Position numbers and translations under genes: made by a program. A model generated the notes under the pieces. The model did not search any database. It was not told the origin of the DNA and saw nothing but the letters and a program-made list of their open reading frames with translations. Below, piece after piece: positions 19,462 to 22,400 of a DNA stretch of 64,000 bases (its first letter is position 1; each line of letters starts with the position of its first letter). The DNA is from Gracilinanus agilis (taxonomy: Eukaryota), in contig NC_058133.1 in assembly GCF_016433145.1 (NCBI RefSeq), forward strand, positions 228,402,803 through 228,466,802. Reading direction: 5' to 3'.

Positions 19462-22400
19462 TTAAAGAACCTTCCTAAATCAGTTTCAAAGCTTATTTTG
19501 GGAAGGGAGCCAACGCAGTCAGAATATCAACGTTATCCCAGCTGAAGAGCCCAATTTAGTAATATCAATTAACCCCAGGTGGGTCCTGAAGGGATAAACC
19601 ACTTTGATCTGAAGGATCCTGCCTGGGCAACTGTTATAAAGGAGAAGTGCCACTTATCATCTCTCTGTACTTTAACGTAATATACATCAAATAGAGTTAG
19701 TGACTTCCTTAAATATAACAATTCTCTTTCTTGAAGTAATTTGGTTTTTACCTTCTATTAGGAATAATATCCAGCCTCATTTGTTCTAGGCAGTATTTTA
19801 TGTCTCTGCTTTATCACTTGGCCTATCTGCCTTGTTCTGGATGAGGATGTATGACTGGTGAACAGCTGCTGAGTTCTCTGGCTCTTCTAGTTGAGTCTTC
19901 CCAGAGCCATACTTCATTGGCTCTTTATAGGAGTTGCATCCATCATTCCAAAAGTGTTCAATACTGTAGCACCTAGGGAATCATAAATAACCCATGTTCC
20001 TCCCCTGGGCATTGTACCATTTACATATACCTTTATTTCCACTAGAATATGCTCTGTAACATAATTCCAGAACTTTAAGATCCTCAGAGAGCTCACAGGT
20101 TTAATGAGTTTGGTCCACTCAGATGTTTTGTCATCAGTTATAGACACAAATGCTGGCTCTTCAGAGAAACTGCATTCTACTGACCCTTTTAAATGATTAC
20201 ATGTTTCAAAGTGTAGAAATTTTGTGAGTGTTTCTGAAATTGAACAGTAGCTTTAAAAAATACATATATATGTGCATTGTATTTATATACACTTATATAT
20301 ACATTTGTTTTCTGTTTTAAATCTGGTATCTGGCTATATAGATTGGTTCCAGTTCCTGTAACTAACCACTTAAACCTGTCTGATGCTTTTATTTTTACTT
20401 TATGAAAGAGGGAGAGACATTTCATGGTTTCCTAATCTGTTTCTCTTCCTTATGCCTTTCAATGGAACTGAAACAGCTGAGATTAAAAAGCTAGTAGCAG
20501 GTATGAATCAAAAGGACTGTGTCAAAATTAAAAAAAAATTTACTCAGGATTTTAAAATCAAAGAACAACATCTTAAATTACAAAGATAATAATGTGCACG
20601 ATCTTGTAAGTATTTTGCATGAGCATGTATGTCAGAACCTCATAAAAAGAATAACAAACCTTAAGCTAAGTCAACATGAATATCAGAACCACAGTCCTTC
20701 TCCCCAACACCCTATAAATGGGCCTTTACCCTAAACAAACATTTGTACATATGTAGATAAGTTCACCACATTTTAATGGCTGAGTAGATTCCTGCCACCA
20801 GCTTACACAGAACTGACTCTGTTACAAGTCCATAAATGGAACCTATTAGAAAATGGGCCACATTATAAAAGCCAAGTTGCTTAAGACATGTTTCAGAGAG
20901 ATTAAAATTGGAAGAGATAGACAGGGATCCCTAATTGCAATCTCTACTGTGTCCCTGGGGCTATATTAATATATTCTGCTTATATATTAATATGCAGGAA
21001 TGGCTTTCATTCTATCAGTAAAGCTTTATACTGTGGTCCTGCTGGTTTGAAATCTTGAGCTACATGTTTTAGAGCCCTGGTTTTCAGGGAAAGCTTTTCA
21101 TCTCTACCTTGTATTAAATCCAATCAAGCCACGGAATACATTGTTTACTGCCAGACTCATAGTCCTTTGTCTTCACACTTCTTAGTGTACCTTTGACTCT
21201 TTGGGAGCATTTGAGATTGGATCTAGCTTGTGGGCCCTGAAATATTGGTCTTTATAAAGGGAAGTGGAATGTATAAACTTCTGCATTTACTCCGCCCCCC
21301 CTCCCCTTTCAGGAGGCCTTTCTCTTATAATAGTTGACTATGATAATAGCTGACAACTACTTAAGAATTTAAAATGTCAATTAGACATTTGTTTTAAAAT
21401 CTACAAAGAAATAGTTGTAACTACTTGATGTTTTTTTTTTTAAAGTGTTTTGGTCTGCACTAGAGCCCCAAGGCATCAGGATTTTATACTCCCTATAATC
21501 TTTCATGGGAGGTGACTTCATTTAAGTGAAAGTGGTACATTGGATCAGAGGATATTACTAATGAGACCAGAGAGTTGTGTAGGTTTGAGCTTGTCAAACC
21601 AGTTAACTTTATACTGTTCCCCAAACACAAATTATATTTGTAATCCTGGTTAGTTTTCTTGGGAATTTATACCATTAGTAAAGAGGGAACTGTGTGAAAA
21701 ACTCTCTATGCATTAATGGGAAGCATCTCTTGCTCTTGCTCATTATTTTAACTTCTTAATTTTGGAGCTCACATTTCATTTATCTTCAGGTGTCAGAATT
21801 CCCAGGTAATGCATATTCTAACTGGTTCTTATTCAAAGTCTCCTGACTTAAGCAGCTATATTTTAAGACTAAATAGTGGACTGAAAATGAGCCTATTCCA
21901 GTATTCATATACCCTCCATGCCTCAAAAGCAGTAGTATAACTAATCTAGCATAAGTAAAGTCTAGTTGTTCAATCCTAAAAAAGCTTTTGGAAAAGATTT
22001 CCATATTTTCTTTAGTCTTGAAGACTGCTCAGAATCTCTGGAGAGGATTCTGGTTTTCTCAGAATTTATTCCTCTTTCTCCAGTAGATTAAGGGGAAAAA
22101 AATCATTAAAAATTTTTTCTTATTCTTTTTTTCAAAAAGTGGGGCAGAAGGATTGTTTTTTGTTTTAGATCATTAAAAACATTCTGAATATAGTGGGTAA
22201 TTCTTCAGTCTTAGTATTCATTTTGATTGAGGGACAAGCGGGTTTGATTTCTATTGTTTCTGAGCTACAAATTGGTGTACAAATAGAGAAAAAAAAACAG
22301 TTTGGTCACTATTAGGAGATGGGCTTTTGCCCTGGCCTCTAGGAAGGGTAAATGAATCTGATGATCAGCTTCTAAGAAGTCTTTGAGTGTTTACATATAG

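What the first reader, a model, noticed from the sequence alone, without database searches (positions are those of the whole stretch)
20431..20506. Hidden 24-nt microexon with neural (SRRM4-type) architecture in SLC38A10
Not visible as an exon in the ORF track. It has branch point cctaat, a pyrimidine tract, a UGC motif 24 nt upstream, an AG acceptor, 24 nt, and donor CAG|GTATGA. It is phase-symmetric and turns SKLE-EAGKAEM into [19 protein letters not shown], an amphipathic heptad-like piece just before the conserved coiled coil. Upstream UGC plus an extended pyrimidine tract is the established SRRM3/4 microexon signature. I recall AEIKKLVA in rodent isoforms. Inference: a neural switch in coiled-coil register or oligomerisation of the lumenal tail.
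Basis: partly seen in the sequence, partly recalled or inferred. Interest (0 to 1): 0.7.

Follow-up and report, generated by a model that had tools for sequence, protein, structure and literature searches.

The report
Known SLC38A10 neural microexon, marsupial copy
The 24-base piece is almost certainly the real marsupial copy of a tiny alternative exon of the transporter gene SLC38A10 that is already annotated in many mammals and used in mouse studies as a neuronal microexon, so the call is correct but not new.

Summary
Window 20477-20500 (+) is a 24-nt, phase-1 symmetric, stop-free segment between an AG and a CAG|GTATGA donor. It lies in the 4.7-kb intron between two SLC38A10 exons and would insert AEIKKLVA between ...SKLE and EAGKAEM.

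The signals alone are not rare: the intron holds 52 such frame-keeping candidates. The peptide decides it. The same eight residues sit at the same junction in RefSeq/UniRef isoforms of mouse, rat and other rodents. Close variants (AEIKKIVA, AEIRKMVA, AEIKQIVA) occur in primates, carnivores, ungulates and whales. A killifish isoform carries VIKKLVA there.

Published mouse RT-PCR primers for a "previously identified neuronal microexon" of Slc38a10 bracket exactly this junction.

So this is an ancient, already known microexon, here in a marsupial genome. The neural/SRRM4 reading is plausible: UCUCUU and UGC lie upstream, tandem RBFOX-type GCAUG motifs downstream. AlphaFold models put the insert inside one continuous helix that runs into the conserved coiled coil (61 to 69 residues). 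Published data support a lumenal tail.

The parts
20477..20500 (+). 24-nt alternative microexon of SLC38A10 (phase 1-1). With the G carried over from the upstream exon it encodes AEIKKLVA.
   Evidence: Sequence and translation. An identical peptide sits at the same junction in rodent RefSeq isoforms and in Logan transcript P0014.
20431..20476 (+). 3' splice-site region: candidate branch point CTAAT 20432-20436, pyrimidine tract 20436-20460 containing UCUCUU (20442-20448) and UGC (20453-20455), a purine-rich spacer, and the acceptor AG at 20475-20476. The AG-free zone starts after 20415.
   Evidence: The motif layout matches what is published for SRRM4-dependent microexons (PMC13174390). The function of the motifs is inferred.
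20501..20506 (+). 5' splice site CAG|GTATGA (7 of 9 consensus positions).
   Evidence: Among the six 24-nt candidates in the intron, it is the only one with a GTRNG donor.
20616..20627 (+). Tandem RBFOX-type motifs UGCAUGAGCAUG, 116-127 nt downstream of the microexon; a candidate downstream splicing enhancer.
   Evidence: only 3 GCATG pairs lying within 15 nt of each other occur on the + strand in 64 kb. The function is inferred.
17810..17905 (+). Upstream constitutive SLC38A10 exon (96 nt, phase 1-1), ending ...NPGSKLE plus G; donor gtaagt.
22616..22792 (+). Downstream SLC38A10 exon encoding the conserved coiled coil (E)[47 protein letters not shown]. Its acceptor is a NAGNAG site, CAG|AAG, at 22613-22618.
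   Evidence: The exon is nearly invariant across vertebrate proteins. Isoforms with and without the E exist in rodents.
23150..24249 (+). Last coding exon of SLC38A10 (divergent tail, conserved RRRRRDL...LRSALDTQL end, stop at 24247-24249).
   Evidence: hits P0001 and P0002.

Best explanation
Window 20477-20500 is the marsupial orthologue of the known 24-nt alternative microexon of SLC38A10 (SNAT10).

When it is spliced in (17905^20477 and 20500^22616), it adds AEIKKLVA to the long lumenal C-terminal tail, directly before the conserved Gln-rich coiled coil. When it is skipped, the reading frame and the flanking residues are unchanged.

By orthology with mouse, inclusion is most likely enriched in neurons. 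The probable drivers are an SRRM4/SRRM3-type upstream enhancer (UCUCUU plus UGC in the 3' part of the pyrimidine tract, followed by a weak purine-rich 3' splice site) and tandem RBFOX GCAUG sites about 120 nt downstream.

At the protein level the insert is predicted to lengthen one continuous helix by 8 residues (about two turns) and to add an I/L/V patch at the N-terminal end of the coiled coil. That could tune self-association or partner binding of the tail.

Shown: the sequence features, and the orthology (same junction, length, phase and peptide) from teleost to mammals. Taken from the literature: the mouse exon is a neuronal microexon and the tail is lumenal. Inferred: splicing and neural restriction in this species, the regulators, and the structural effect. 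My odds are about 0.9 that it is a real, used exon, about 0.65 that it is neural-enriched here, and about 0.5 that it depends on SRRM3/4.
For: Sequence: exact coordinates, phase and translation.

Orthology:
- Logan transcript fragment P0014 reads [28 protein letters not shown].
- The same insert is in RefSeq 'isoform 7 [Mus musculus]' (P0082), Rattus X1 (P0067), and Mastomys, Peromyscus, Microtus and Apodemus isoforms.
- Variants occur elsewhere: AEIKKIVA in non-human primates, lemurs, squirrels, horse, cat, sea lion and colugo; AEIRKMVA in whales, oryx and warthog; AEIKQIVA in mustelids.
- Teleost protein P0044 has [21 protein letters not shown] at the same junction.
- Skipped forms (SKLE-EAGRAEM) coexist in the same species, so the exon is alternative.

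[quoted passage not shown] They bracket only this junction in P0082 (PMC8378409).

Regulatory motifs: UCUCUU, UGC at -24, a 59-nt AG-free zone, and tandem GCAUG downstream. The published SRRM4 architecture is a UGC between the pyrimidine tract and the 3' splice site, with a weak 3' and a strong 5' splice site (PMC13174390).

Structure: the helix is 244-312 with the insert (residues 251-258, block pLDDT 52-67) and 62-122 without it.

Topology: O-GalNAc sites lie on both sides of the junction, the tail is labelled by an ER-lumen biotin ligase and a fragment is found in serum, and an 11-TM model puts the C-terminus outside.

Rough abundance: among the listed rodent Logan assemblies, inclusion forms sit on few contigs (P0068 on 4, P0014 on 1). 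Skipped forms sit on many (P0157 on 64, P0153 on 48, P0147 on 31), as expected for a tissue-restricted exon.
Against: - No read evidence from this species.
- No marsupial, bird or reptile protein with the insert was seen. Only the best 120 of 1059 hits were listed, and the bird fragments seen were all the skipped form.
- The UGC is expected by chance about 40% of the time.
- Splice-site strength was judged by consensus only; no MaxEnt score was computed.
- Many RefSeq 'X1' models include the exon, so inclusion may not be strictly neural.
- SLC38A10 is also listed as an RBM20 target.
- pLDDT over the insert is only moderate, and the hydrophobic residues of the insert are not at a/d in the best heptad register.
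Confidence: 0.85

Rival explanations
1. It is a real, conserved microexon, but it is controlled mainly by RBFOX and/or by relief of PTBP1 or RBM20 repression rather than by SRRM3/4. Inclusion would then be broader (neurons plus muscle or heart).
For: Tandem UGCAUGAGCAUG lies 116-127 nt downstream; such a pair is rare (3 in 64 kb). The upstream tract carries UCUU/CUCUU motifs of the PTBP1/RBM20 type. SLC38A10 is listed among RBM20 splicing targets (PMC8468976). Many RefSeq X1 models include the exon.
Against: The mouse exon is treated as one of the neuronal microexons from an SRRM4-centred screen panel. A UGC is present at the typical place. Conservation of the RBFOX motif could not be checked. 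The RBM20-regulated exon of SLC38A10 is not named in the review.
Confidence: 0.3
2. It is a relic or chance pseudo-exon. The 24-mer is present in the intron but is not spliced in this marsupial.
For: There is no read evidence here. AG...GT frame-keeping candidates are common in the intron (52 of them). The 3' splice site looks weak: 16 purine-rich bases separate the tract from the AG.
Against: The peptide is 8/8 identical to the rodent insert at the same junction. The AG, the GT, the open frame and the AG-free zone are all intact after a therian-scale divergence, and the IKKLVA core is kept even in a teleost. A weak 3' splice site is the norm for this class of exon.
Confidence: 0.05
3. It is a constitutive exon in this species, always included and merely too small for an ORF track.
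For: Nothing in the window rules it out. Some species have only inclusion forms among the listed proteins.
Against: Skipped and included forms coexist wherever several isoforms are listed (rat, Mastomys, Peromyscus). The weak 3' splice site and the enhancer-type motifs point to regulated use.
Confidence: 0.05

Closest known systems
Mouse and rat Slc38a10 24-nt microexon (RefSeq 'isoform 7 [Mus musculus]', Rattus X1). It was RT-PCR-assayed in N2a cells as a previously identified neuronal microexon (Choudhary et al. 2021, PMC8378409).
   Same: Same exon-exon junction (SKLE | EAG[KR]AEM), same length and phase, identical peptide AEIKKLVA, and the same NAGNAG acceptor variant on the downstream exon.
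   Different: This is a marsupial genome. Expression, tissue pattern and regulators were not measured here, and intron sequences could not be compared.
SRRM4-dependent neuronal microexons such as the 24-nt exons of Clasp2 and CPEB4 (PMC13174390, PMC12628316).
   Same: 24 nt and frame-keeping; a UGC at the 3' edge of the pyrimidine tract about 24 nt from the exon; a weak-looking 3' splice site and a good 5' splice site; the insert lies in a surface or helical region next to a structured domain.
   Different: SRRM4 dependence is not shown for this exon in this species. The UGC alone is near chance expectation. A tandem RBFOX site suggests added or alternative control.
Teleost slc38a10 21-nt microexon (Nothobranchius korthausae UniRef isoform, P0044).
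   Same: Same junction before the coiled coil, and the same IKKLVA core.
   Different: 7 residues (VIKKLVA) instead of 8. The flanking residues differ (KME | EGQLD).

Membership tests
Orthologue of the mammalian SLC38A10 24-nt microexon | Lies in the intron between the ...SKLE exon and the coiled-coil (E)AG[KR][11 protein letters not shown] exon | tested here: met
   Exons 17810-17905 and 22616-22792 flank it. The insert is at the same junction in P0014, P0082, P0067 and others.
Orthologue of the mammalian SLC38A10 24-nt microexon | 24 nt, phase 1-1, encoding [AD]EI[KR][KQ][LIM]VA | tested here: met
   AEIKKLVA, 8/8 identical to the murid form.
Orthologue of the mammalian SLC38A10 24-nt microexon | Actually spliced into mRNA in this species, alongside a skipped form | not testable with these tools
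SRRM3/SRRM4-dependent neural microexon | Length 3-27 nt and frame-preserving | tested here: met
   24 nt, no stop, phase-symmetric.
SRRM3/SRRM4-dependent neural microexon | UGC motif between the pyrimidine tract and the 3' splice site, with an upstream UCUC-type element | tested here: met
   UGC at 20453-20455 (-24) and UCUCUU at 20442-20448. A TGC within 40 nt is expected by chance with P about 0.4, so this is weak evidence.
SRRM3/SRRM4-dependent neural microexon | Weak 3' splice site with a stronger-than-average 5' splice site | tested here: inconclusive
   Qualitative only: 16 purine-rich bases lie between the tract and the AG, and the donor matches 7 of 9 consensus positions. No MaxEnt score was available.
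SRRM3/SRRM4-dependent neural microexon | Neural-enriched inclusion | not testable with these tools
SRRM3/SRRM4-dependent neural microexon | Inclusion falls when SRRM4/SRRM3 is lost and rises when it is expressed | not tested
   This needs an experiment. No paper read here reports it for Slc38a10.
RBFOX-activated exon | (U)GCAUG within about 300 nt downstream of the exon | tested here: met
   UGCAUG at 20616 and GCAUG at 20623. Conservation and function were not testable.
Helical extension of a coiled coil | The insert is helical and continuous with the downstream coiled-coil helix | tested here: met
   AF2 helix 244-312 with the insert versus 62-122 without it. pLDDT over the insert is only 52-67. 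The models are monomers of rodent proxies.
Helical extension of a coiled coil | The insert changes the oligomeric state or the register | not tested
   The heptad assignment is ambiguous: I, L and V fall on c, f and g in the best register. No multimer model or biophysics was done.

The most novel reading that the evidence does not exclude
The function of this exon has, as far as the papers searched show, never been studied. The most novel reading still open is this: a microexon conserved from teleosts to mammals acts as a neuron-specific switch on the lumenal coiled coil of an ER/Golgi amino-acid transporter. It would change self-association, partner binding or the shedding of the tail fragment that is found in serum. 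In this reading SRRM4 and tandem RBFOX sites together set its inclusion.
Probability: 0.2. Interest if true: 0.45.

Novelty: already known. Interest (0 to 1): 0.2.

Why it matters
For annotation, it shows that an ORF-blind 24-nt exon of SLC38A10 is present and intact in a marsupial. Together with the teleost isoform, this dates the exon to before the split between fish and tetrapods.

Biologically it is one more member of the conserved neuronal microexon programme. The exon itself is already in RefSeq models and in published RT-PCR panels, so nothing new is learnt about splicing. What remains open is what eight extra helical residues do to the lumenal tail of SNAT10.

Tried and rejected
- Reads. 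The look-up of sequencing runs gave one near-complete holder (X21) and three runs of the same organism holding 24-32% of the words (X22-X24, likely RNA). No junction evidence could therefore be obtained. No letters of 18651-18710 were sent to any search tool afterwards. A local script that listed candidates across the whole intron did print one 24-nt candidate from those places.
- The word search with the opossum's last exon found only two eutherian fragments. Marsupial proteins were not among the 120 rows listed.
- The large representative search was not run.
Exons were searched by reference and, after that, database protein ids were used. The only joined strings were short peptides in a local heptad script.
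- Supplement look-ups for Slc38a10 found nothing in MicroExonator (PMC7821500) or in the zebrafish microexon paper (PMC12626420). A CHyMErA-seq paper (PMC12868881) holds no supplements as text. Irimia 2014 (PMC4390143) is not held.
- My own first guess, that the tail is cytosolic, was dropped after I read the O-glycosite and ER-lumen labelling papers.

Full report
**What is in the sequence.** On the + strand the window reads ...tcctaatctgtttctcttccttatgcctttcaatggaactgaaacag | CTGAGATTAAAAAGCTAGTAGCAG | gtatga....
- The 24-mer occupies 20477-20500, the acceptor AG is at 20475-20476 and the donor GTATGA is at 20501-20506.
- Upstream lie a CTAAT branch-point candidate (20432-20436) and a 25-nt tract with 22 pyrimidines (20436-20460). 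The tract contains UCUCUU (20442-20448) and UGC (20453-20455, 24 nt before the exon).
- There is no AG between 20415 and the acceptor.
Exon 17810-17905 ends GGC AGC AAG TTA GAA G|gtaagt (...GSKLE, phase 1). Exon 22616-22792 follows tgtcag and reads (G)AA GCT GGC AAG... = [21 protein letters not shown]....
- Spliced in, the 24-mer reads G|CT GAG ATT AAA AAG CTA GTA GCA G|AA, which is A-E-I-K-K-L-V-A, and the E is restored.
- The last coding exon is 23150-24249.

**Is it more than chance?** The splice-signal pattern by itself is not.
- The 4.7-kb intron contains 52 stop-free, frame-keeping AG...GT candidates of 3-27 nt. Six are 24 nt long.
- This is the only 24-nt candidate with a pyrimidine-rich upstream region (0.73) and a GTRNG donor.
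- A TGC within 40 nt is expected about 0.55 times.
- The decisive evidence is the peptide, described next.

**Orthology.** The joined model was not searched. The opossum's last exon was searched by reference, and from then on database proteins were used.
- A region search with fragment P0001 returned Logan transcript fragment P0014, which reads ...[32 protein letters not shown]. It also returned a killifish UniRef isoform (P0044) reading ...[23 protein letters not shown], next to many skipped forms.
- A region search with P0014 listed 120 of 1059 hits. [quoted passage not shown] It is also in Mastomys, Mus caroli, Phodopus, Peromyscus, Microtus, Apodemus, Mesocricetus and others.
- Variants are AEIKKIVA (non-human primates, lemurs, squirrels, chinchilla, degu, horse, cat, sea lion, colugo), AEIRKMVA (whales, oryx, warthog), AEIKQIVA (mustelids) and DEIKKIVA (jerboa).
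- Skipped forms (SKLE-EAGRAEM) coexist in the same species, so the exon is alternative.
- The opossum peptide is 8/8 identical to the murid one and shares the L of the teleost form. L is therefore probably ancestral.
- Earlier notes of this scan call this genome an opossum. That fits the marsupial-type L1 ORF1 at 1649-2544 and the 32% identity of the tail exon to a eutherian fragment. I did not verify the species.

**Literature.**
- Choudhary et al. [quoted passage not shown] Their primer table includes Slc38a10.
- The forward primer translates to EKKEAE, and the reverse complement of the reverse primer to QVIQEQQ. In P0082 these bracket [46 protein letters not shown], so they span this junction only.
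- The exon is therefore already known, and is treated as neuronal, in mouse.
- The figure itself is not held as text, so I cannot say whether it was among the seven PRPF40A-sensitive exons.
- No paper held links Slc38a10 to Srrm4/nSR100 directly.
- SLC38A10 is listed as an RBM20 target in a review, without naming the exon.

**How it probably works at the RNA level.**
- The published signature of SRRM4-dependent microexons is a UGC between the pyrimidine tract and the 3' splice site, with a weak 3' and a strong 5' splice site (PMC13174390).
- The opossum exon fits this. UCUCUU and UGC lie at the 3' edge of the tract, 16 purine-rich bases precede the AG, and the donor matches 7 of 9 consensus positions.
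- In addition, UGCAUGAGCAUG lies at 20616-20627, 116-127 nt downstream. Only three such GCATG pairs occur on the + strand in 64 kb. This is the classical position for RBFOX-mediated activation.
- All regulator assignments are inference. None was tested.

**How it probably works at the protein level.**
- AlphaFold2 on alignments of rodent-led proxies gives one long helix in both forms: 62-122 (61 residues) in the skipped fragment P0010 and 244-312 (69 residues) in the included fragment P0014.
- In both models the helix starts 2-3 residues before SKLE. The insert (residues 251-258) lies inside the helix.
- Confidence is moderate there (block pLDDT 52-67), against 84-95 in the coiled-coil core.
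- So the insert most likely lengthens the helix by about two turns and adds an I-x-x-L-V patch.
- A simple heptad fit is ambiguous. In the best core register I, L and V fall on c, f and g, and the core itself uses a broad g/a/c/d stripe. A 'register switch' is not established.
Mouse O-GalNAc sites run from S429 to S1047, on both sides of the junction at about residue 677 (PMC11402288). [quoted passage not shown] An 11-TM model puts the C-terminus outside (PMC5458457).

**What could not be done.**
No junction reads from this species were seen, and nothing from those places was sent to a search tool afterwards.
- No vertebrate genome collection was on hand, so intron conservation was not measured.

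**Verdict.** It is, however, the marsupial copy of an already annotated microexon, described as neuronal in mouse. The neural/SRRM4 architecture is plausible, and a likely RBFOX contribution is added here. The structural idea (helix extension before the coiled coil) is supported at the level of prediction only. Novelty is low; the function of the insert remains unstudied.

Noticed in passing
window 20616-20627 (+): Tandem RBFOX-type motifs UGCAUGAGCAUG lie 116-127 nt downstream of the microexon donor. Only three GCATG pairs lying within 15 nt of each other occur on the + strand in the whole window.
   Followed up: partly
window 22613-22618 (+): The coiled-coil exon has a NAGNAG tandem acceptor, CAG|AAG. 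Use of the distal AG would drop the single E (SKLE-AGKAEM). Rodent RefSeq isoforms with and without this E exist, both with and without the microexon.
   Followed up: partly
window 1649-2544 (-): Two overlapping-frame ORFs resemble L1 ORF1 protein (coiled-coil plus RRM-like part). This is a LINE-1 remnant, consistent with a marsupial genome.
   Followed up: no
window 19153-19418 and 54615-54772: Runs of N (266 and 158 bases).
   Followed up: no
window 17700-17760 (+): A (CA)n / (CAAACA)n microsatellite lies directly upstream of the 17810-17905 exon's 3' splice-site region.
   Followed up: no
P0097 (Peromyscus X3), P0034, P0038-P0041, P0050-P0051 (teleosts): Several database models read different, hydrophobic or odd residues just upstream of the microexon or coiled-coil exon (for example ...[21 protein letters not shown], or ...CVLLLCAEGQLD). 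They look like retained-intron or mis-predicted exon ends at this junction.
   Followed up: no
window 15974-17147 (+): Two long open stretches carry the acidic, low-complexity middle exons of the SLC38A10 tail, including the conserved [11 protein letters not shown]...[10 protein letters not shown] motif. That motif is invariant in the mammalian alignment A1.
   Followed up: no
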